From assembly GCF_026571515.1 (NCBI RefSeq), contig NW_026860085.1, positions 1-64,000 of the forward strand: 64,000 nucleotides of DNA, given 5' to 3'. The translations under genes were made by a program, and so were the position numbers. A model generated the notes under the pieces. The model was not told the DNA's origin. It saw only the letters and a list, made by a program, of their open reading frames with translations, and made no database searches. Source of the DNA: Ruditapes philippinarum (taxonomy: Eukaryota). Below are positions 22,152 through 33,661 of the stretch, piece after piece. The number at the start of each line of letters is the position of its first letter. Position 1 is the first letter of the stretch.

Positions 22152-24766
22152 TCAAGGAACTGCTGGAATTGCTGGACAGGTGGCGGCAGCTGAAATTGTA
22201 AACCACCAGTACTTCCTGCAGCAACATCCACGAGGTACCCATACATACCTCCATCTCCATGTTTGTAGCCACCCAAAAGAATCGATACCATTGCTCGTAT
22301 TAAAGACTATTCTGTAACAATATACTGGCAAACGGATCAACCTGAATGAAAACAAACGGTCTTTGATTTGATTTTTGTTACAATGTTATTTTCATAATTT
22401 TTGTTACAATGTATTTTTTTCCATTTTTGTTACAATGTTATTTTCATCATTTTTGTTACAATGTAATTTTCACCATTTTTGTTACAATGTTATATTTACC
22501 ATTTTGTGTTACAACCTTATTTTCACAGACAATAATGAGGTCATGAACGTTGCAATGGTGTTAAAACTGTGATTGTATGCATTTCCGTACAATTATACCG
22601 AGCTTACCATTGCTTTTGTACAAAACCATGTGTTTGAACTTTGATATCTTTGTTAGTAAAGCAATTAGCTATTGCAACTTAGAGAGGGATAAGTATACAT
22701 TGTATTACTGAAAATGACATAAATCTAAAATGTAGGTATAATGTACGAAAATAGAAGTAACAATTTGTCTGTGTTTTGAATATAAAATATTTGGTCAGTA
22801 GTCATTACCTGTAATCGGGGAAACATCTGTATCTAGAGTCGACCCAAGTGAACGGCCAGTAGCTCCAGTGACAGTGGCTTCTACAAACGAAATACAAAAA
22901 CATATATAATACAATTTAGTTCTCGTTGACATTTCATAATTAGTATCGTAGAAGTTTAGAAGTTAGACATATAGACATGTTAAGATATTAAGAGATTATT
23001 GTACTATATGAAACAAGCACTTCCTTGTCTATGGAAAAATTGACAACAAAGGATGTCAATGAAACCTACAAACTTATCTTTATTTTGTAAAATAAATCTA
23101 GAAATAAAAATAAGGATACACTTACGCTCCACAATATGTGCCCCAAACCCACCACGGTGACCACCAGTATTCCAGGATGACTGTACCATCAGACTGTAGG
23201 GACCAATATCTCCAGTACCATCTATAACGCCACAATACATACCACTTATACGGGCACGTTCTCCAGTAATATGGCAAAGCTCTAAAACAAACAAATAGCT
23301 CATAAATTATCGAAAGTGTAAATTATCGAAACTTGATATTACTTGATCGAATAATGATATTAATTAGTGCCACTTATCGAAACTTGATATTTATTAGTAT
23401 AAATCATTAAAACTTGATATAAATGTAAATGTTTGCTTTTTATTCTCTCCGGCAGAGAACATTTTTGTTTCTTATGATAATCACATAAAAATAAACTTCA
23501 TCTTTATTAAATCATATTACTTACGTTCACAGATTACAGATTCAAAATCATTGAAGTTATAATACTAATGAAATCAATATAGGCGTTGAAATTGAAACAC
23601 GTGAAATATTTCACAATAACAGTGTGTACTATTAAATTAATCCAGCGTTTTTGTAGTAAGGCATATATAGTAAGGTACATTACAAAATTCAATACGTTTC
23701 TAATTGAACTACAACTTACATGTCTAGATCTGCAGCAGAACCAACTGGTCCAAGATCTGCTTCTAAAATGTCACGTGACACTAGCTCTTCAGCTTTTGCT
23801 TCTATTGAATCACTGTAATCATAAATACATAGAGGATATTCAAGTTTTTTACTGTAAATACATAATTTTTATTTTCATCAAGTGGTATGAAAATAAATAT
23901 TTCATGAGTGGCGGTAGCCACGAGTAAAATATGTTAATTTTCATGCCACGAGTAAAATATGTTAATTTTCATGCCACAAGATGAAACTAAATCATGTATT
24001 TACAGAAAAAAAAATTGAATTTTCTGTTTATTATATACATTTTCCTATTTTTTGACATTAATTTGAAAGAATTTCCCTTAAATGTTGTGTACTGGCAAAA
24101 TTTAAAAGAAAGTAGTCCCGTCAAGACACCAGTGAAAATACGGAAAATATGTTTCACCACAGTGAAAAACACATTTTTACAGTGAAAATACGGAAAATGA
24201 AAATACGCATTTTATTTCATCAATATTTCTCAATATTTCATCTATAAGTATATAATAAATACGTGTATGAGTCTGTGTGTGTTATATTTTGGTTACCTTC
24301 ACCATCAGAAAAAAATTGGGCGAGTATGACTGCATAAGATGGTTCTGGATTAATGTTATAAGATAAAAAAAAAAGATTCTTATCAAACTACTTCAATGAA
24401 AACATTCAGTTTAGGTTTGTCTGTTTATGTTTCTATTAACATGCTTGTATCAGCAACACGTGATTAAAATGCAGTAAGAATTGGTTACCGCTTCCTAGAC
24501 GTTAATTCTGCCAATATGACCTGGTCTAGGTCTAGATACACGTTTCACCTCGTTAATTCTGCCAATATGTCCCGGCTCAGGTTGCCCTCGAGGGCTGACA
24601 GAGCTGCAGTGTATCTGAGTCTGATATTCATGCTGGCAGTCGCTTGTATCTGAAGATCGTGATCCATCGCGTCTTCCTCGCTAGGACAATCCGGCATGGT
24701 CTTCTGAGACGTCACATACTGTGTCCCAAACAACACCATGAATAAAAACAATGAGAAGCGTCCCAT
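22152..24766 (-). CDS. secreted Trp/Tyr/Arg-rich cystine-knot-type protein (Spaetzle/noggin/trunk-like topology) with acidic pro-region, ~242 aa
   Basis: Exons 24766-24549 (signal peptide MGRFSLFLFMVLFGTQYVTS), 23812-23720, 23281-23126, 22880-22809, 22341-22152 (TGA). All introns are phase 2, GT-AG. C-terminal domain: TCP...YCGASHC...YRCFPDY...VYC...VPRGCCC. AATAAA on the - strand at 22040-22035. An acceptor at 24771 implies a non-coding upstream exon. Confidence 0.85.
22372..22525. repeat. 28-bp tandem repeat (TTTTTGTTACAATGTTATTTTCATCA-like), ~5 copies
   Basis: Directly visible; explains spurious ORF 22375-22572. Confidence 0.85.
23828..24260. mobile_element. second member of the hairpin-headed element family (cf. 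2626-3810)
   Basis: ATAGAGGATATT start, tip GTGGC-GGTA-GCCAC (23908-23921), repeated AGTGAAAATAC tail. Confidence 0.55.
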
Positions 24767-24857
24767 TTTCCTGACAACAATACATGAAAATACGAGTTAA
24801 GAATGAATTTTTATTGGTAAAAAGCGTGCGTTTAATACAAATCTCAGTGGTATTTTT

Positions 24858-24916: not shown

Positions 24917-24979
<63 letters not shown>
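24858..24979 (+). repeat. (TTA)n microsatellite, probably the 3' tail of a truncated LINE
   Basis: About 20 TTA units (24918-24979) preceded by AATAAA and a GAGGGCCTCATGGAAGATT...GAG segment resembling a CR1/L2-type 3' end. Confidence 0.75.
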
Positions 24980-26869
24980 TCACTTAATTTTGAAGAGGCC
25001 TTAGCCTCTTAATTTTGGAAAATGTTTCGCTAAAATTGCAAATTTAGGAAGTAAAAAAGCTTAACATTTTGGGAAAACTCCGTGATTTTAAAGAAAATTT
25101 CCATTTGGAAGAGGCCGGTTATGTAGGCCTCTGTTGAAGAGGTAAAAATCATTAAATCTTTACCTTATACATGTATTATTTTCATTTTCAGATTTTCAGA
25201 TTTTATATATAGCAAAGATTTTTATGCTGCTTATAAAATTTATATCATTAGAAATTTCTTTTTTCTTACAGCAATGGAAAATTTGATTTCTGAAGAAAAA
25301 AAAAATAAATAAACATTCATCCAATATTCCTTAAAAGATCATTTTATTTTGATACATGTTTACTTGTATTTGATATACATGTAGTTCGCTTTATATAAAC
25401 AACCTGTCAAGATGTCGTTAAGATATTAAAAAAAAGTTTTAACCCTTTTTATTTAATTAATTATAAATATAGAGTTGCAAAACAGCTACGAATACACGAC
25501 TTAAACATTGAAATACTGTAAATACATGTATTCTAACCAGTACATGTATAGGTTTTTAATTCATAACATGACATATTTCCAATTTAACTATCCAGTAATA
25601 AAGTAAATAATTATTAACGAAAAATTTCTAATGATACGAGGGTGGTTTCCCAATAATTCTTGGAATGCAAATACTCAAAGCGCTTCTTAAAGATTTTAAC
25701 TGATATTTAATACGCTATTGTCGATAGTACGAACAAAACATAAAAAAACAGCATGATATCATTTAATTTGACGGTAAAGCTACCTAGTAACGAAATACGG
25801 CCATTGTCCACGGCTTTGCGGGACAGCCCTCGTTTAATTAATTTCAGACATATTTTATTTTGGCAATATTATCATTATTATTAGTATTGATGACAATAAT
25901 GTTCTTGTCGAATTTAAAGCTCCTATTGAGATAGAATTCAATAATAAAAATTAAATTACAGTATTAATTGTGTAAAAGTTGGCAGCAATTAACATTTCAA
26001 AAACAAAGTACCAATCATATATTATACAAACTACCACTAAAATATCGCTGAATATGTAAGCGGTGCAAAAATAGTGTAAAGATAACTTACATTATTCTTA
26101 TTTCCATTCAAATCACACTCCAAGATGATTACAAGCCCCGTGTGCTTAGCCTTTTAATCGCACTAGAAAGTAGTCCGGCAGGCACGTTGCAAATTTTGAT
26201 TGGAGCTTTTACAGTCATCACAAATAATGGTAAGATGAACCCTATCTGGACGTTGAAAGCTGTTCCTTTGAACTTTTTTGTACACAACATGGGAGGTTCT
26301 TGCTGCCTATGCTATTGTCACCCTACCCCGCCCCACGCCCTCTTCTATAAGCTGTATTGAATGATCCTTTTACGTCAGTTTATAATATTTTTGATATTTT
26401 TTATGTTTTAATTAGTGAACAGGGTACTTCTAAATCATATATCGAATTAAAGAAGTTTTTCACGCAATGATATAAAGGTGTAGTATTATTGAGTACAAAT
26501 GAAATATGGCAAAAGAAAACATATTTTGATAATTTTAGTCAAACATATCACAATTATAATCAGAAAATGGCGAGACTGTTAGTGATAATCGAGGCGTGTT
26601 TAAAGAATATTTTATCAAAGGTTAGTAGGGCATTTAACCATCATTTACCATGATTGGATAAAGACAGTGTATATGTTATATTTTCTATCTATCAATTATC
26701 TAACGATCCTCCCTTTATTGTTTTTTTTTTGTATTAGCCTTAGCGTAGTGATTTCTGAACTGCTGGATTACTAATCATGTTAATAATTGCGGTGATAAAT
26801 CGATTGTGAAAATGAAGGATAACATAACAGACTTAGAAAAGAATCTGAAAATAATTACAAACACCACTT

Positions 26870-29800
26870 ATGGAAGTTTTGGTAAGTTTTTTTATACATT
26901 CATTTTTATTCTTTTTTAAACTTTTGGGCTTCTAAAGAGCTATTCTACTGAGATTACGTTATGTTTCAATAATTGAGTGAATTGAATACTTTTGGCTATA
27001 GTGGCTGATTTTGAACACATTTGTTTGACGTGTTGTCGCTAGCGACACCACGACAAAGCGCCAAACGGCGCAGTGTCGCATTGTCGTCTTGTCGCTAACG
27101 AAGCACACCAAACGCCGTGCTGCCTGTTATCACGACCACATTGTCGCTCGGCTCAAATCGAAGGATTGGCTGTTTGTATATATATTATTAGTTATATATA
27201 TATTTTGACAAGCTATATATGGCCCTATATAAACGATTGTTTGTAAATAAAACCCGAGCCGCTAGGCTACGGTTATATTGCAAACAACCGTTTATATATG
27301 GAATAAACTGTTTGCTCAAATAAGCTATGTATTTATATATAACACCGCATTTAAAATACCGGAGTCTTTGAATACATTGTATATACTTAATAATAAATTG
27401 AAACGCTATTTTTCAATTGATTCGTTTTAGAGATGTTTTGCAAACACTTGGTTAAATCGAACTTGAAAAAATGGCGACCGGGTCAAGAAAAAATATCTGG
27501 TGATTTTAAATGTTGTCCAAATTTTTAGCACATTATACTTCATTTGAACTTAAACAATAACTAGTCGCTGCGTAAAAAATTTTCATTAAATACCAATTCA
27601 ACGTATAATCAGGTCCAATAAGGTCCTGATTTAGATCAGATTGTTGAATAAAATAAACAAATCTGGGATATTCTTATGTTCAACATATAATAATTGCAAT
27701 AACATAACTTGACATTGTTTTTAATTTAAGTGTTGCTTTTCAGAGAGCGTTATGTATCTTTATGACGTGCATCAGTAATGTACAGACATATCCTATAGAA
27801 CACGACATTAACAGCCGCCAAGTCACACGATGTTTATTACCGCAAATACAGTTACTTAATGGTATTCTTGTTCCCGACAGACCAATGCCACGGTACGATT
27901 TCTCTCAATTAACAATGTTGAAGGTAATCAAAATATAACGGTCTTTTAAATTTTATTTTTATCGGAAGAAATTGCAGCAAAATGACGTTCAATAACATCA
28001 TAGATATAATGATAATGAAATACAATATTGAATTGTTTGTTACATGTTAGAAATCAATTTAAAATAAAAAAAATGACAAGTTGGCAGAGATACAGGTATG
28101 CCAATAATGTTTGGCTCTCGGTGTGTTAAGAATCAAGATCACTGATTAAAGGATTTCTGACCCTTATGACTGTGTGTTTGAAACTTGCAAAACCGTTAAA
28201 TTCTTTCACACGTGTAGTCTATACAGCTTTATATGAAAACCGGTGACCCATAATACCCGCGTCCTTAATACGCCTGCATCCTCCCTCGCACAGGTGTCAG
28301 TTTACCTGAACACTGTTCCGAACTTAACCAAAGAAACATATTGTTGAATTATTGCAGAAAGGACTATAAGAATGCATTACGTAAAGAACCAAATGGTAGA
28401 GAGATTAATGCCATGATCAGACAGACGAAAGAAGAGCTGGGACGTGTAGCTGAGTATGGCAATCAACCTTTTAAACAATATGAGCCGCGTCACGACAAAA
28501 CCAACATAGTGCGTTTGCGAACAGCATGGATCCAGACCAGCCTGCGCATCCGCGCAGTCTGATCAGGATCCATGCTGTTCGCTATCAGTTTCTCTACTTG
28601 TAATAGGGTTTTTAAGCGAACAGCATGGATCCTGATCAGACTGCACTGACGAGCAGGCTGGTCTGAATCCATGCTGGTCGCAAACCCATTATGTTGGTTT
28701 TGTCGCGACACGGCTCAATTATAACACTTTCCAATTTTCACATTTAGTGCCAGAATCTGTAGATTATTGTAATTCATTCAACTATCGATGCTTAATGAAG
28801 AGATAATAGAAATTAGATGTCACGTGGTTCATTTAAAGTTTTGTTCTTTATGAAAGTATACTTTGTATACCTAGTAGCGCTTATGTCAATAGTAGAATCA
28901 ATATTGTTATTTTTAGTGTTCTCTTTCAGTTCCGCCTAAACATAATTATTTTCAGCAGCTTTCTTCCAGATTAATTCTAATTTTTATGAAAATTGCAAGT
29001 GTATTTAAAGGTAAAAATTGTAAAGTGAACACAAAAGTAATTTACACATTGCAAACATGTAATGTATATGATTTAGGTTTGTTGGTGAAAAATGCCGAAG
29101 CTTCCGGCAAATATTATTTATTTAATTTTTGGGGATGTCTAGAAAAAACATCATGTATCGTATACATAGACCGATTTATCGTTTGTTTGCATGGTAACCA
29201 GTTTAGAAAAAGAGTTTGACAAGAATTCCGCCCTCTGCTTCCCTCCTTTGTGCAAGTCGAGAATCCGTGTCATAACCAACTGGAGGGTTTTAGGCACAGA
29301 CTGCTGGGCCATACAGCCTGTTATCTGGAGACAATGCAAGGAAAAGTGAGAGAAAAATGACACTAAATCAGTTATCCTAAAATTATATAAAACTGAAATG
29401 ATTTATTATTTACTTCTTAATTTTAAAGCTGTAATTTTAAAGTTTTTTCTCTCTTATTGATAAGATCCGTGAAAGAGATCTTCTAGAAAAATGACTAAAA
29501 TGTAAAGTCGGACTATTTTCTAAATGATTCTGGTCAGAGGTATATAATTGTTAACAATTCTCTGTTCTCACGACTTGTTCATTCTCGTACTTCTTAGCGA
29601 AAACTGAGGCAAAAAATAAACCTAACCACAATATACTTTGTGATATATATTTATATCTATGTTGTTTCAACTAAAACATGGAACACTTAACATGCAAATT
29701 TTGATGCATCTTTCTCTTTCTCACTGAGATATACGGTTACATTTCAACTTGAAAAAAAGTTTTTGCTGATTTTGGAATATTAATTTCAGACCATTGGATG

Positions 29801-29964
29801 CGTTTTCGTGTGTAAACGAGATGTCTACGACAGGGCTAGGTTATACTTGTCAGTCAGAATATATGCCGGTAACGGTGTTGGTATATTGTCAACATGGTGT
29901 GCCAGCGTTCCGCTACATGTCTGTTTATGTCTCATTTAAATGCTCACGTAGGTTCATGTTATAA
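26870..29964 (+). CDS. secreted cystine-knot-type protein, divergent paralog of 22152-24766 (~214 aa; possibly decaying)
   Basis: Exons 26870-26881 (MEVL), 27744-27861 (RALCIFMTCISNVQT-YP..., signal peptide), 28294-28453, 28970-29010, 29207-29345, 29790-29964 (TAA) give 645 nt with no stop. C-terminal LCKS...DCW...RQCKEKPLDAFSC...YTCQSEY...LVYC...VYVSFKCSR aligns with the neighbouring gene. The middle exon boundaries are uncertain. Confidence 0.7.
27226..27298. repeat. foldback hairpin (tip AGCC-GCTA-GGCT)
   Basis: TATATAAACGATTGTTTGTAAATA / TATTGCAAACAACCGTTTATATA arms. Confidence 0.7.
28482..28716. mobile_element. 235-bp palindromic MITE (Sola-like), copy 4
   Basis: Same family; central spacer is in the opposite orientation to copies 1-3. 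Confidence 0.9.
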
Positions 29965-30672: not shown

Positions 30673-33661
30673 GAGCCAGGCCAGTCTCCGTTTCGTCTGA
30701 CCTGTGATAGAGCCAAGCCAGCCTTTGTTTTGTCTGACCTGTGATAGAGCCAGGTCAGCCTCCGTTTATTCTGACCTGTGATAGAGCCAGGCCAGCCACC
30801 GTGTAATTTGACCTGTGATAGGGCCGGACCAGCCTCCGTTTAGTCTGATCTGTTATAGAGCCAGGCCAGCCTCCATTAAGTCTGATCTGTATCAGAGCAA
30901 GGCCAGACTCCGTTTAGTCTGATCTGTAATAGTCAGGCCAGCCTCCGTTTAGTCTGATCCGTGATAGAGCCAGGCCAGCCTCGGTTTAGTCTGACCTGTG
31001 ATAGAGCCAGGCCAGCCTCCGTTTAGTCTGACCTGTGATAGAGCCAGGCCAGCCATCGTTAAGTCTGACCTGTGATCGAGCCTGGCCAGCCTCCGTTTAG
31101 TCTGACCTGTTATAGAACCTGACCAGCCTCCGTTTAGTCTGACCTGTGATAGAGCCAGGCAAGCCTCCGTTTAGTCTGACCTATGATAGAGCAAGACCAG
31201 CCTTCGTTTAGTCTGACCTGTGATAGAGCCAGGCCAGCCTCCGTTTAGTCTGACCTTTGATAGAGCAAGACCAGCCTCCGTTTAGTCTGACCTATGATCG
31301 AACCTGACCAGCTTCCGTTTAGTCTGACCTGTGATAGAGCCAGACCAGCCTCCGTTTAGTCTGACATATGATAGAGCAAGACCAGCCTCCGTTTAGTTTG
31401 ACCTGTGATAGAACCTGACCAGCCTCCATTTAGTCTGACCTGTGATAGAGCTAGGCCAGCCTCCGTTTAGTCTGACCTGTGATAGAGCCAGGCCAGCCTC
31501 TGTTCGTCTGACTTGTGATAGAACCTGACCAGCCTCCGTTTAGTCTGACTTTTGATAGAACCTGACCAGCCTTCGTTTAGTCTGACCTTTGATAGAGCCA
31601 GACCTGCCTCCGTTTAGTCTGACCTGTGATAGAGCCTGACCAGTCTCCGTTTAGTCTGACCTGTGATACAGCCAGGCAATCCTCTGTTTAGTCTGACCTA
31701 TGATAGAGTAGAGCAAGACCAGCCTTCGTTTAGTCTGACCTGTGATAGAGCAAGACCAGCCTTCGTTTAGTCTGACCTGTGATGGAGCAAGGCCAGCCTT
31801 CGTTTAGTCTGACCTCTAATAGAGCCAGGCCAGCCTTCGTTAAGTCTGACCTGTGATAGAGCCAGGCCAGCCTTCGTTAAGTCTGACCTGTGATAGAGCC
31901 AGGCAATCCTCTGTTTAGTCTGACCTATGATAGAGCAAGACCAGCCTTCGTTTAGTCTGACCTGTAATAGAGCCAGGCCAGCCTCCGTTTAGTCTGACCT
32001 ATGATAGAGCAAGACCAGCCTCCGTTTAGTCTGACCTGTGATAGAGCCAGGCCAGCCTTCGTTTAGTCTGACCTGTGAGAGCCAGGCAATCCTCTGTTTA
32101 GTTTGACCTATGATAGAGCAAGACCAGCCTTCGTTTAGTCTGACCTGTGATAGACCCAGGCCAGCCTCCGTTTAGTCTGACCTTTGATAGAGCAAGACCA
32201 GCGTTCGTTTAGTCTGACCTGTTATAGAGCCAGACCAGCTTTCGTTTAGTCTGACCTGTGATAGAGCCAGGCCATTTTCTGTTAAGTCTGACCTGTGAAA
32301 GAGCCAGACCAGCTTCTGTTAAGTCTGACCTGTGATAGAGCCAGGCCATCCTCTGTTTAGTCTCACCTGTGATAGAGCCAGACCAGCCTACGTTTAGTCT
32401 GACCTGTGATAGAGCCAGACCAGCCTACTTTAATCTGACTTGTGATAGAGCCAGGCCAGCCTCAGTTTAGTCTGACCTGTGATAGAGCCAGGCCATCCTC
32501 TGTTAAGTTTGACCTGTGATAGAGCCAGGCCAGCCTCCGTTTAGTCTGACCTATGAGAGAGCAAGACCAGCCTTCGTTTAGTCTGACCTGTGATAGAGCC
32601 AGGCCAGCCTCCGTTTAGTCTGACCTATGATAGAGCAAGACCAGCCTTCGTTTAGTCTGACCTGTGATAGACCCAGGCCAGCCTCCGTTTAGTCTGACCT
32701 TTGATAGAGCAAGACCAGCGTTCGTTTAGTCTGACCTGTGATAGAGCCAGACCAGCTTTCGTTTAGTCTGACCTGTGATAGAGCCAGGCCAGCCTTCGTT
32801 TAGTCTGACCTGTGATAGAGCAAGACCAGCCTTCGTTTAGTCTGACTTGTGATAGAGCCAGACCAGCCTTCGTTTAGTCTGACGTGTGATAGAGCCAGAC
32901 CAGCCTCCGTTTAGTCTGACCTGTGATAGAGCAAGACCAGCCTCCGTTTAGTCTGACTTGTGTTAGAGCCAGACCAGCCTCCGTTTAGTCTGACCTATGA
33001 TAGAGCAAGACCAGCCTTCGTTTAGTCTGACTTGTGATAGAGCCAGACCAGCCTCCGTTTAGTCTGACTTGTGATAGAGCCAGACCAGCCTCCGTTTAGT
33101 CTGACCTGTGATAGAGCCAGACCAGCCTCCGTTTAGTCTGACCTCTAATAGAGCCAGGCCAGCCTTCGTTTAGTCTGACCTGTGATAGAGCCAGACAAGC
33201 CTCCATTTAGTCTGACCTGTGATAGAGTCTGACCAGCCTCCATTAGTCTAACCTGCAATAGAGCCAGGCCAGCCTTGTGTAGTCTGACCTGTGATAGAGC
33301 CAGACCAGCCTACTTTAGTCTAACCTTCAATAGAGCCAGGCCAGCCTCCGTTTAGTTTTGACCTGTGATAGAGCCAGGCCATCCTCTGTTAAGTCTGACC
33401 TGTGATAGAGCCAGGCCAGCCTCTGTTAAGTCTGACCTGTGATAGAGCCAGGCCATCCTCTGTTTAGTCTGACCTATGATAGAGCAAGACCAGCCTTCGT
33501 TTAGTCTGACCTGTGATAGAGCCAGACCAGCCTCCGTTTAGTCTGACCTGTGACAGAGCAAGGCCATCCTCTGTTAAGTCTGACCTGAGATAGAACCAGG
33601 CCATCCTGTTAAGTCTGACATGTGATAGAGCCAGGCCATCCTCTGTTAAGTCTGACCTGTG
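30673..33661. repeat. 37-bp satellite array, ~80 copies (GAGCCAGGCCAGCCTCCGTTTAGTCTGACCTGTGATA)
   Basis: Uninterrupted head-to-tail units; period 37 (GTGATAGAGC at 30961 and 30998). Confidence 0.97.

What the first reader, a model, noticed from the sequence alone, without database searches (positions are those of the whole stretch)
22152..23281. Cystine-knot domain with extreme Trp/Tyr/Arg composition
Seen: the last three exons encode about 138 aa containing, by hand count, 20 Trp, 16 Tyr and 13 Arg (e.g. WYVLWRYRWYWRYW, EYWWSPWWVW, WLQTWRWRYVW). The upstream pro-region is acidic (SEEDAMDHD, DSIEAKAEE, LEADL...DLD). The paralog at 29207-29964 has only three Trp in the same region, so the enrichment is specific to this copy. 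Inference: a signalling fold re-tooled as either (a) a Trp/Arg membrane-active antimicrobial neutralised by an anionic propiece, (b) a cation-pi/aromatic self-assembling shell, periostracum or adhesive protein, or (c) a UV-absorbing or high-refractive-index material protein compositionally reminiscent of reflectins.
Basis: partly seen in the sequence, partly recalled or inferred. Interest (0 to 1): 0.82.

Follow-up and report, generated by a model that had tools for sequence, protein, structure and literature searches.

The report
Tryptophan-packed secreted clam knot protein
The Trp/Tyr/Arg-rich reading is the true frame of a real, already annotated but uncharacterised secreted Manila clam protein. 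It belongs to a tiny clam family whose cysteine framework looks like a stretched IL-17/Spaetzle-type cystine knot, and its function is still unknown.

Summary
**Observation: confirmed.**
- The window encodes RefSeq XP_060606477.1 exactly (uncharacterized LOC132758796, Ruditapes philippinarum; 249 aa, six coding exons on the minus strand).

**Frame: the Trp frame is real and the Gly-rich frame is its shadow.**
- Splice phases carry the Trp frame from the signal peptide to the TGA stop.
- The Gly frame meets a TAG inside the last exon.
- A 262-aa homologue from another organism keeps 12 Trp and 10 Cys in place.
- Two distant paralogues share the exon phases and are open only in this frame.

**Composition in the family.**
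- Aromatic richness runs through the family at 22-30%.
- The paralogues are Tyr-rich (4 Trp, 23-24 Tyr). Only this gene and its orthologue shifted to Trp.

**Fold: probable, not proven.**
- In favour: six Cys in cystine-knot order, an IL-17-like ring spacing, four predicted long strands, and language-model neighbours that are Spaetzle, IL-17, NGF or Noggin.
- Not in favour: Pfam, PDB sequence, profile-profile and fold searches gave nothing significant.

**Other points.**
- Function is open. I favour a cytokine-like extracellular binding protein over an antimicrobial or material role.

The parts
26091..26107 (-). Coding part of the 5' exon of the RefSeq model. It holds an upstream ATG and five whole codons plus two bases of a sixth, followed by a GTAAGT donor.
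   Evidence: matches residues 1-5 of P0001
24549..24770 (-). Exon 1. It holds a second in-frame ATG at 24766, the signal peptide, and the start of the acidic, predicted-helical N-terminal region with the conserved C-x-x-E-E-[DE]-A motif. It ends in phase 2.
23720..23812 (-). Exon 2, the rest of the acidic N-terminal region. It ends in phase 2 with a GTAAGT donor.
23126..23281 (-). Exon 3, the first predicted long beta-hairpin of the Cys-rich domain. It runs from knot Cys 1 (the T-C-P motif) to knot Cys 2 and holds 13 of the 20 Trp.
22809..22880 (-). Exon 4, with knot Cys 3 and knot Cys 4 (the conserved R-Y-R-C motif). It ends in phase 2.
22152..22341 (-). Exon 5, the second predicted long hairpin, with the conserved P-[RK]-x-C-C-C motif (knot Cys 5 and 6), a last Cys, and the TGA stop at 22154..22152. 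The acceptor at 22343-22342 is the one used by RefSeq and conserved in the homologues.
22371..22525 (.). 26-bp tandem repeat (about 6 copies) inside the intron between exons 4 and 5. It is not coding.

Best explanation
**Shown**
- This is a real protein-coding gene of the Manila clam, read in the Trp-rich frame. Its product has a signal peptide, an acidic region of about 83 aa predicted to be helical (net charge -12), and a C-terminal 138-aa cationic domain (+10) with 9 Cys.
- It belongs to a very small family: one orthologue in another organism and two near-identical distant paralogues in this genome. No Pfam model covers it.
- The whole family is 22-30% aromatic. This gene and its orthologue replaced many Tyr by Trp at fixed positions. 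12 Trp are invariant between the orthologues, and six of this gene's 20 Trp positions hold Tyr in both paralogues.

**Inferred**
- The domain is a divergent cystine-knot cytokine fold, closest in pattern to invertebrate IL-17. It has a C-P-x start, a C-x4-C plus C-x-C ring, and sits at the C-terminus. Its two beta-hairpin fingers are 19 and 10 residues longer than in this clam's IL-17s.
- On the predicted strands, aromatic residues recur at i+2 and Arg/Lys sit at odd offsets from Trp. The long strands therefore carry a Trp/Tyr face and an Arg-rich face.
- I take the aromatic and Arg residues to be mainly architectural. They would form stacked aromatic or cation-pi layers that hold the long coreless ribbons together and make a dimer or N-region interface, as Trp-Arg layers do in thrombospondin type 1 repeats.
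- On this reading the protein acts as a secreted, disulfide-linked extracellular ligand or binding protein, probably in the immune or mucosal context of the expanded bivalve IL-17-like repertoire.
For: **Frame and gene**
- The exon translations are identical to XP_060606477.1.
- GT-AG sites and phase-2 junctions keep the frame from the ATG and signal peptide to the TGA.
- The Gly frame has a TAG inside exon 5.
- P0002, on a 985-nt Logan contig with an uninterrupted 262-aa ORF, is 39-40% identical over the full length, with 12 W and 10 C invariant. It is not encoded in this genome.
- Paralogues on contigs C12909 and C15479 have the same exon breaks and phases and are open only in this frame. 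Their differences in exon 3 fall 1, 1 and 5 by codon position.
- Codon shuffles: if the Gly frame were the coding one, the Trp frame would be open with P = 0.0003. The reverse case gives P = 0.045.

**Family composition**
-.

**Fold**
- The Cys order and spacing match this clam's own IL-17 ORFs.
- Four long strands are predicted in two hairpins.
- The language-model neighbours of both orthologues are Spaetzle, IL17, NGF and Noggin clusters, best score 0.88 with 181 and 172 shared features. The Atlas model has TM 0.53 to an IL-17A-like cluster.
- Invertebrate IL-17s are described as low in identity, with a C-terminal domain, 6-8 Cys and a CPW motif whose third residue varies (PMC8353272).

**Strand faces and N-region**
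- Aromatic pairs at lag 2: 18 observed against 11.8 expected (P = 0.008). W with R/K is enriched at lags 1 and 3 and depleted at lags 2 and 4.
- The charge contrast between the N-region and the domain is conserved, there is no R-x-[KR]-R site, and the N-region holds a conserved Cys.
Against: **Fold**
- There is no significant sequence or profile link to any cystine-knot family. Pfam found nothing. The Spaetzle and IL17 HMMs hit 5 and 33 other loci in this genome but not this gene or its paralogues. hhalign gave probability 1% and 0.4%. PDB sequence search found nothing.
- The AlphaFold models are poor (pLDDT 37 and 42), and Foldseek and VIA-align found nothing meaningful.
- Atlas scores below 0.9 count only as leads.

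**Strand faces**
- The periodicity signal is weaker in the orthologue.

**Evolution and expression**
- The domain is split over three exons here, while this clam's IL-17 and Spaetzle domains are each matched as one uninterrupted open frame. It is therefore not a recent offshoot.
- There are no expression, proteomic or disulfide data. A ligand with about 30% aromatic residues would be unprecedented, which leaves effector or material roles open.
Confidence: 0.45

Rival explanations
1. Structural or adhesive matrix protein of the shell, periostracum, byssus or mucus. The Tyr/Trp/Arg/Cys-rich domain would self-assemble or stick through cation-pi, pi-pi and oxidative (DOPA or disulfide) cross-links. 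The composition recalls mussel foot proteins 3 and 6.
For: - The family is 22-30% aromatic, with up to 18% Tyr in the paralogues, plus many Arg and Cys.
- It is narrowly restricted by lineage: two homologue clusters among 1.84 billion representatives.
- From my own knowledge, mussel foot protein 3 is rich in Tyr/DOPA, Arg and Trp, and foot protein 6 is rich in Tyr and Cys.
Against: - Residues are conserved position by position within a fixed Cys framework. This is not a repetitive low-complexity array, and no tandem repeats lie in the coding exons.
- The gene is single copy with few paralogues.
- No tissue or proteome evidence could be obtained.
Confidence: 0.2
2. Trp/Arg-rich antimicrobial protein. 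The amphipathic cationic beta-sheet would be kept inert by the anionic N-terminal region until that region is removed, and would then insert its Trp face into microbial membranes.
For: - The domain carries +10 or +14 against -12 for the N-region, in both orthologues.
- Trp and Arg segregate to opposite strand faces.
- From my own knowledge, Trp/Arg-rich and beta-hairpin antimicrobial peptides are well known, and anionic propieces occur in defensin and cathelicidin precursors.
Against: - There is no furin-type or dibasic site at the boundary between the N-region and the domain in either orthologue.
- The conserved Cys in the N-region suggests a covalent tether rather than release.
- At 138 aa with 9-11 Cys, the domain is far larger than known Trp-rich peptides.
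- The Tyr-rich paralogues have the same architecture without the Trp.
Confidence: 0.15
3. The exons are really read in the Gly-rich frame, or the model is a prediction artefact, and the Trp richness is only a frame shadow.
For: - The Gly-rich frame is open across exons 3 and 4 and most of exon 5.
- It has somewhat fewer stops than codon shuffles predict (P = 0.045).
- XP_ records are computational models.
Against: - The Gly frame has a TAG inside exon 5 and does not fit the best splice sites.
- The 99-aa Gly-frame ORF has no homologue, while the Trp frame has an orthologue and paralogues with conserved W and C positions and exon phases.
- In the paralogues the equivalent frame is full of stops, except in exon 4 of the C15479 copy.
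- The Trp frame would be open by chance with P = 0.0003.
Confidence: 0.02
4. Optical material protein, UV-absorbing or of high refractive index, in the manner of reflectins.
For: Only the very high Trp and Tyr content.
Against: - The domain has no Met, is Cys-rich and is predicted to be all-beta.
- There is no Pfam match of any kind.
- From my own knowledge, reflectins are Met-rich, Cys-poor, repeat-based and confined to cephalopods.
- A burrowing clam has no known tissue that would need such a protein.
Confidence: 0.02

Closest known systems
Invertebrate interleukin-17 (Pfam PF06083, cystine-knot cytokine)
   Same: - Both are secreted, with a long N-terminal region and the Cys domain at the very C-terminus.
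- The domain opens with C-P-x, where IL-17 has CPW.
- The six knot Cys come in the same order.
- The ring spacing is the same: C-x4-C, with an extra Cys at +2 in the paralogues exactly as in this clam's IL-17s, and C-x-C preceded by P-x-G (PMC8353272).
- The Atlas model has TM 0.53 to an IL-17A-like cluster.
   Different: - There is no HMM or profile match.
- The Cys1-Cys2 and Cys4-Cys5 segments are 19 and 10 residues longer.
- Aromatic content is 22-30%.
- The domain is split by two phase-2 introns, whereas this clam's IL-17 domains are each matched as one uninterrupted open frame.
- It carries extra Cys: one in the third predicted strand, the middle one of C-C-C, and one near the C-terminus.
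Spaetzle / neurotrophin (PF16077, PF00243)
   Same: - Architecture of signal peptide, N-terminal pro-region and C-terminal knot domain.
- A C-C-x-C-like motif near the C-terminus.
- These are the top language-model neighbours for both orthologues.
   Different: - The ring spacing in this clam's Spaetzle genes is C-x8-C, not C-x4-C.
- hhalign probability is 1%.
- No protease site is recognisable at the boundary.
Thrombospondin type 1 repeat and the WSXWS motif of cytokine receptors (Trp-Arg layered folds)
   Same: - Small disulfide-capped beta structures without a hydrophobic core, held together by stacked Trp and Arg side chains (my own knowledge).
- This domain has W-x-x-W and R-x-R motifs, four and three respectively.
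   Different: - There is no homology.
- Here Trp and Arg lie on opposite faces of the same strand, so any layering would have to be between strands or chains.
- This is an analogy of principle only and was not tested.
Mussel foot proteins 3 and 6; Trp/Arg-rich antimicrobial peptides
   Same: The compositional flavour: Tyr, Trp, Arg and Cys, cationic.
   Different: - There is no sequence relationship.
- Those proteins are short and largely unstructured or repetitive.
- This one has a 138-aa domain conserved position by position with a fixed Cys framework.

Membership tests
Cystine-knot cytokine superfamily (IL-17 / Spaetzle / NGF / Noggin type) | Six Cys in the order C1 ... C2-xn-C3 ... C4 ... 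C5-x-C6, conserved across the family | tested here: met
   C120, C161, C166, C182, C226 and C228 of P0001 are invariant in the orthologue and in both paralogues.
Cystine-knot cytokine superfamily (IL-17 / Spaetzle / NGF / Noggin type) | Two long two-stranded beta-hairpins and little else | tested here: inconclusive
   AlphaFold predicts strands 124-139, 144-159, 185-201 and 210-224, but at pLDDT 37-42.
Cystine-knot cytokine superfamily (IL-17 / Spaetzle / NGF / Noggin type) | Structural similarity to solved members | tested here: inconclusive
   Foldseek found no hit at E <= 0.001 and VIA-align gave a best Z of 3.9 to unrelated folds, on a low-confidence model. The Atlas's own model has TM 0.53 to an IL-17A-like cluster.
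Cystine-knot cytokine superfamily (IL-17 / Spaetzle / NGF / Noggin type) | Knotted disulfide connectivity (1-4, 2-5, 3-6) | not testable with these tools
   Needs disulfide mapping or a solved structure.
IL-17 (PF06083) | Match to the family HMM above its cut-off | tested here: not met
   hmmscan of P0001 and P0002 gave no hit at E <= 10. A genome-wide PF06083 search found 33 loci, none at this gene or its paralogues.
IL-17 (PF06083) | Profile-profile similarity to bona fide IL-17 domains of the same genome | tested here: not met
   hhalign probability 0.4%, with only 9 columns aligned around the V-P-x-G-C-x-C motif.
IL-17 (PF06083) | CPW/SPW motif at the start of the domain, and C-x4-C plus C-x-C ring spacing | tested here: inconclusive
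   C-P-Y, C-P-H or C-P-E stands in place of CPW. The ring spacing is identical to this clam's IL-17s (A4 invariants C24, C26, C29, C82, C84). The motif description comes from PMC8353272. Short motifs alone do not prove membership.
Spaetzle (PF16077) | Match to the family HMM, or profile similarity to this clam's Spaetzle genes | tested here: not met
   No Pfam hit. The five Spaetzle loci lie elsewhere. hhalign probability 1%. The ring is C-x8-C in this clam's Spaetzle genes.
Processed cationic antimicrobial peptide precursors | A recognisable cleavage site that releases the cationic part from the anionic propiece | tested here: not met
   No R-x-[KR]-R motif anywhere in either orthologue. Neither has a dibasic pair at the boundary, and P0001 has none anywhere in the N-region.
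Reflectin | Met-rich reflectin repeat motifs and a Pfam reflectin match | tested here: not met
   The domain has no Met and there is no Pfam match of any kind.
   tblastn found nothing at E <= 10. hhalign gave probability 0.3% and 0.2%, with only a 17-column Y-x-C...V-Y-C match. The neighbour's last ORF has no C-x-C.

The most novel reading that the evidence does not exclude
A cytokine-type cystine-knot scaffold has been turned, in venerid clams, into an effector or material protein. Its elongated fingers would carry one Trp/Tyr face and one Arg face and act directly, by inserting into membranes, binding chitin or glycans, or self-assembling through cation-pi contacts, instead of signalling through a receptor. 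The conserved acidic N-terminal region would serve as an intramolecular shield. This would be a new functional class built on the IL-17/Spaetzle fold, and one of the most Trp-rich folded domains known.
Probability: 0.3. Interest if true: 0.75.

Novelty: new variant of a known kind. Interest (0 to 1): 0.5.

Why it matters
- A folded secreted domain that is conserved position by position and has 14.5% Trp and about 30% aromatic residues is very unusual.
- The family gives a natural series from Tyr-rich paralogues, to the orthologue with 14 Trp, to this gene with 20 Trp, all on a fixed disulfide framework.
- That series could show how aromatic and cation-pi stacking stabilises long beta-ribbons that lack a core.
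- If the fold is confirmed, it extends the very divergent bivalve IL-17/Spaetzle-like repertoire to a form that HMMs cannot detect.
- If the protein acts directly on membranes or matrices, it would be a new use of a cytokine fold and of interest for biomaterials or antimicrobial design.
- The case also shows that a striking composition in one of two open frames can be resolved from sequence alone, using splice phases, paralogues and codon shuffles.

Tried and rejected
**RNA and contig tools**
The DNA and sample of P0002 could not be fetched and no dN/dS could be computed.

**Sequence searches with no result**
- Gly-frame ORF of 99 aa: no homologue.
- Word-indexed searches with P0001 and with the alignment found no further members.
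- Phage collection: nothing.
- Pfam per exon and on the full proteins: nothing.
- PDB sequence search: only chance hits.

**Structure**
- Two AlphaFold jobs gave pLDDT 37 and 42.
- Foldseek against the PDB and the wide VIA-align search gave no meaningful match.
- hhalign against this clam's Spaetzle and IL-17 alignments was not significant.
- The homodimer job returned 'no answer' with score 0.00, the fold being uncertain. It is no evidence either way.

**False leads**
- Weak own-genome hits to the paralogue's last exon (E 0.01-0.8) turned out to be a dispersed repeat, not family members.

**Literature**
- Nothing on LOC132758796 or XP_060606477.
- Nothing relevant for Trp-rich or Tyr-rich clam proteins.

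**Spliced model**
- I did not hand my own joined spliced model to any search, fold or complex tool. Exons were searched one by one by reference, and the joined step was left out.
- Full-length analyses used P0001, the database record returned.
- Exons were concatenated only inside one script, for residue counts.
Full report
**1. What is in the sequence**

| Exon | Window coordinates | Note |
|---|---|---|
| e3 | 23281..23126 | |
| e4 | 22880..22809 | |
| e5 | 22341..22152 | TGA is the last codon |

Upstream lie three more coding exons:
- e2, at 23812..23720.
- e1, at 24770..24549, with an ATG at 24766 and a signal peptide.
- A short 5' exon at 26107..26091, with a further in-frame ATG.

All junctions after e1 are phase 2.

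A phmmer search of the 51-aa Trp-frame translation of e3 against 1.84 billion representatives returned two proteins. P0001 is RefSeq XP_060606477.1, 'uncharacterized protein LOC132758796 [Ruditapes philippinarum]'. Every exon translation from the window is found in it letter for letter. The window is therefore Manila clam DNA, and the gene is already annotated but has no name and no literature.

Twenty Trp where about 1.4 are expected gives P about 3e-17.

**2. Which frame is real**

Two frames are open over these exons. One is the Trp-rich frame and the other is a Gly-rich frame shifted by one base. Five lines of evidence favour the Trp frame:
- **Splicing.** With the best GT-AG sites, the frame set by the ATG and signal peptide runs through all junctions into the Trp frame and ends at the TGA. 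The Gly frame cannot be reached from e2 through an AG acceptor, and it meets a TAG inside e5.
- **Orthologue.** P0002 and P0003 are 262 aa, each an uninterrupted ORF on a Logan contig of about 985 nt. That layout looks like a spliced transcript. They align with P0001 over the full length at 39-40% identity, with 12 Trp and 10 Cys invariant. P0002 is not encoded in this genome, because its best matches there are this same gene at 40-45% identity. It therefore comes from another organism.
- **Paralogues.** Two distant paralogues lie on contigs C12909 and C15479. They are 94% identical to each other in exon 3. They have the same exon breaks and phases and the same Cys framework, and they are open only in this frame. 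The equivalent of the Gly frame carries stops in five of their six exons. Their differences in exon 3 fall 1, 1 and 5 by codon position.
- **No Gly-frame homologue.** The 99-aa Gly-frame ORF has no homologue.
- **Codon shuffles.** If the Gly frame were coding, the Trp frame would be stop-free with P = 0.0003. Given the Trp frame, the near-openness of the Gly frame is only mildly unusual (P = 0.045). This follows from the codons, since TGG, TAY and AGA cannot create stops one base downstream.

The Gly-rich frame is a shadow of the Trp-rich frame.

**3. The family and the origin of the composition**

Searches found no further relatives. Domain compositions:

| Protein | Length (aa) | W | Y | Aromatic |
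|---|---|---|---|---|
| This gene | 138 | 20 | 16 | 30% |
| Orthologue P0002 | 145 | 14 | 17 | 26% |
| Paralogue on C12909 | 126 | 4 | 23 | 23% |
| Paralogue on C15479 | 131 | 4 | 24 | 22% |

- Six of this gene's 20 Trp columns hold Tyr in both paralogues.
- One Trp of this gene replaces a Cys that all the others keep.
- Aromatic richness is therefore a property of the family, and the shift from Tyr to Trp belongs to this gene and its orthologue.
tblastn found nothing and hhalign gave probability 0.3% and 0.2%. It has no Pfam hit and lacks the C-x-C motif. Only a 17-residue Y-x-C...V-Y-C stretch matches in spacing.

**4. Architecture**

- After the signal peptide comes a region of about 83 aa, predicted helical, with net charge -12.
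- The domain that follows carries +10. In the orthologue the values are -12 and +14.
- The N-region holds a motif, C-x-x-E-E-[DE]-A, that is conserved in all family members.
- Neither orthologue has an R-x-[KR]-R site, and neither has a dibasic pair at the boundary.
- From my own knowledge of the IL-17F structure, a Cys in the N-terminal extension links to the partner chain. A tethered N-region is therefore at least as likely here as a released propiece.
- The domain has four W-x-x-W motifs, the consensus for C-mannosylation of Trp (my own knowledge), three R-x-R motifs, and an N-T-S sequon in the second hairpin turn.
- Aromatic residues recur at i+2: 18 observed against 11.8 expected (P = 0.008). 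Arg/Lys sit at odd offsets from Trp. The predicted strands 124-139 and 210-224 therefore each have a Trp/Tyr face and an Arg-rich face. The signal is weaker in the orthologue.

**5. Fold**

Negative results:
- No Pfam hit, per exon or on the full proteins.
- No PDB sequence relative.
- The Spaetzle and IL17 HMMs find 5 and 33 other loci in this genome, but not this family.
- hhalign against alignments of those clam genes gave probability 1% and 0.4%.
- AlphaFold models had pLDDT 37 and 42, and structure searches found nothing meaningful.

Positive but weaker results:
- The six invariant Cys stand in the cystine-knot order.
- The ring spacing is C-x4-C plus C-x-C, which matches this clam's IL-17 ORFs. 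The match includes the extra Cys at +2 in the paralogues and a P-x-G-C-x-C ending. This clam's Spaetzle genes have C-x8-C.
- The domain opens with C-P-x. Invertebrate IL-17s are described as low in identity, with a C-terminal domain, 6-8 Cys and a CPW motif whose third residue varies (PMC8353272).
- Four long strands in two hairpins are predicted.
- The ten nearest named language-model clusters for both orthologues are Spaetzle, IL17, NGF or Noggin, at scores up to 0.88.
- The Atlas model has TM 0.53 to an IL-17A-like cluster.
- Compared with this clam's IL-17s, the Cys1-Cys2 and Cys4-Cys5 segments are 19 and 10 residues longer.

I rate a cystine-knot cytokine-type fold at about 0.6. Membership of the IL-17 or Spaetzle families proper was tested and not met.

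**6. How it most likely works**

Shown:
- A secreted protein with a conserved aromatic, Arg and Cys pattern.
- A conserved charge contrast between the N-region and the domain.

Inferred:
- The fold is a knot with extra-long fingers.
- The aromatic and Arg residues are mainly architectural. They would form stacked layers that stabilise coreless ribbons and an interface with a second chain or with the acidic helices. The thrombospondin type 1 repeat is the known precedent for Trp-Arg layering (my own knowledge).
- The protein would act as an extracellular ligand or binding protein within the expanded bivalve IL-17-like repertoire.

Estimated odds:

| Reading | Odds |
|---|---|
| Cytokine-like extracellular ligand or binding protein | 0.45 |
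| Matrix or adhesive protein | 0.2 |
| Antimicrobial protein with an anionic shield | 0.15 |
| Gly-frame product or prediction artefact | 0.02 |
| Optical material protein | 0.02 |

These cannot be separated without expression, proteomic or biochemical data.

**7. Limits**

- The homodimer prediction gave no verdict.
- My own joined spliced model was not given to any search tool. Exons were searched by reference, and the database record P0001 stood in for the full length.

**8. Verdict**

- The claim that the enrichment is specific to this copy needs correcting.
- Function is open.
- This is a new, HMM-invisible variant of a known kind of fold with an extreme composition that is conserved position by position. 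Interest is moderate.

Noticed in passing
window 30673-33661: A 37-bp satellite with about 81 copies at 86% match. It explains the GC-rich block (0.44-0.48) in an otherwise 30-36% GC window.
   Followed up: partly
window 24489-24582: The last ~19 nt of exon 1, together with the region around its donor, recur about 50 nt downstream in the intron. This is the duplication another first-stage note describes. RefSeq uses the first donor, at 24549|24548.
   Followed up: partly
window 26091-26107: The RefSeq model starts in a separate 5' exon with its own ATG, seven codons upstream of the ATG that begins the signal peptide. Which start is used is unknown.
   Followed up: partly
window 29170-29346 (+) and 29770-29961 (+): Cys-containing ORFs of the neighbouring plus-strand gene. 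They have no Pfam hit, no paralogue in the genome and no significant similarity to this family. What the gene is remains open.
   Followed up: partly
G000:C12909:105984-110182 (L020, L009) and G000:C15479:344-2783 (L021): Two Tyr-rich paralogues, about 18% Tyr, that are 94% identical to each other in exon 3. They may be alleles on separate contigs or a recent duplication.
   Followed up: partly
G000:C9878:338669-476515 and G000:C4951:198206-248996: A dense array of at least 13 IL-17-domain ORFs within about 140 kb, and a tandem array of five near-identical Spaetzle-domain ORFs within about 50 kb.
   Followed up: no
L010-L019 (ten contigs): A dispersed repeat whose translation gave weak false hits to the paralogue's last exon.
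   Followed up: partly
window 22371-22525 and 24918-24979: A 26-bp tandem repeat (about 6 copies) in the intron between exons 4 and 5, and a perfect (TTA)x21 microsatellite just upstream of exon 1.
   Followed up: no
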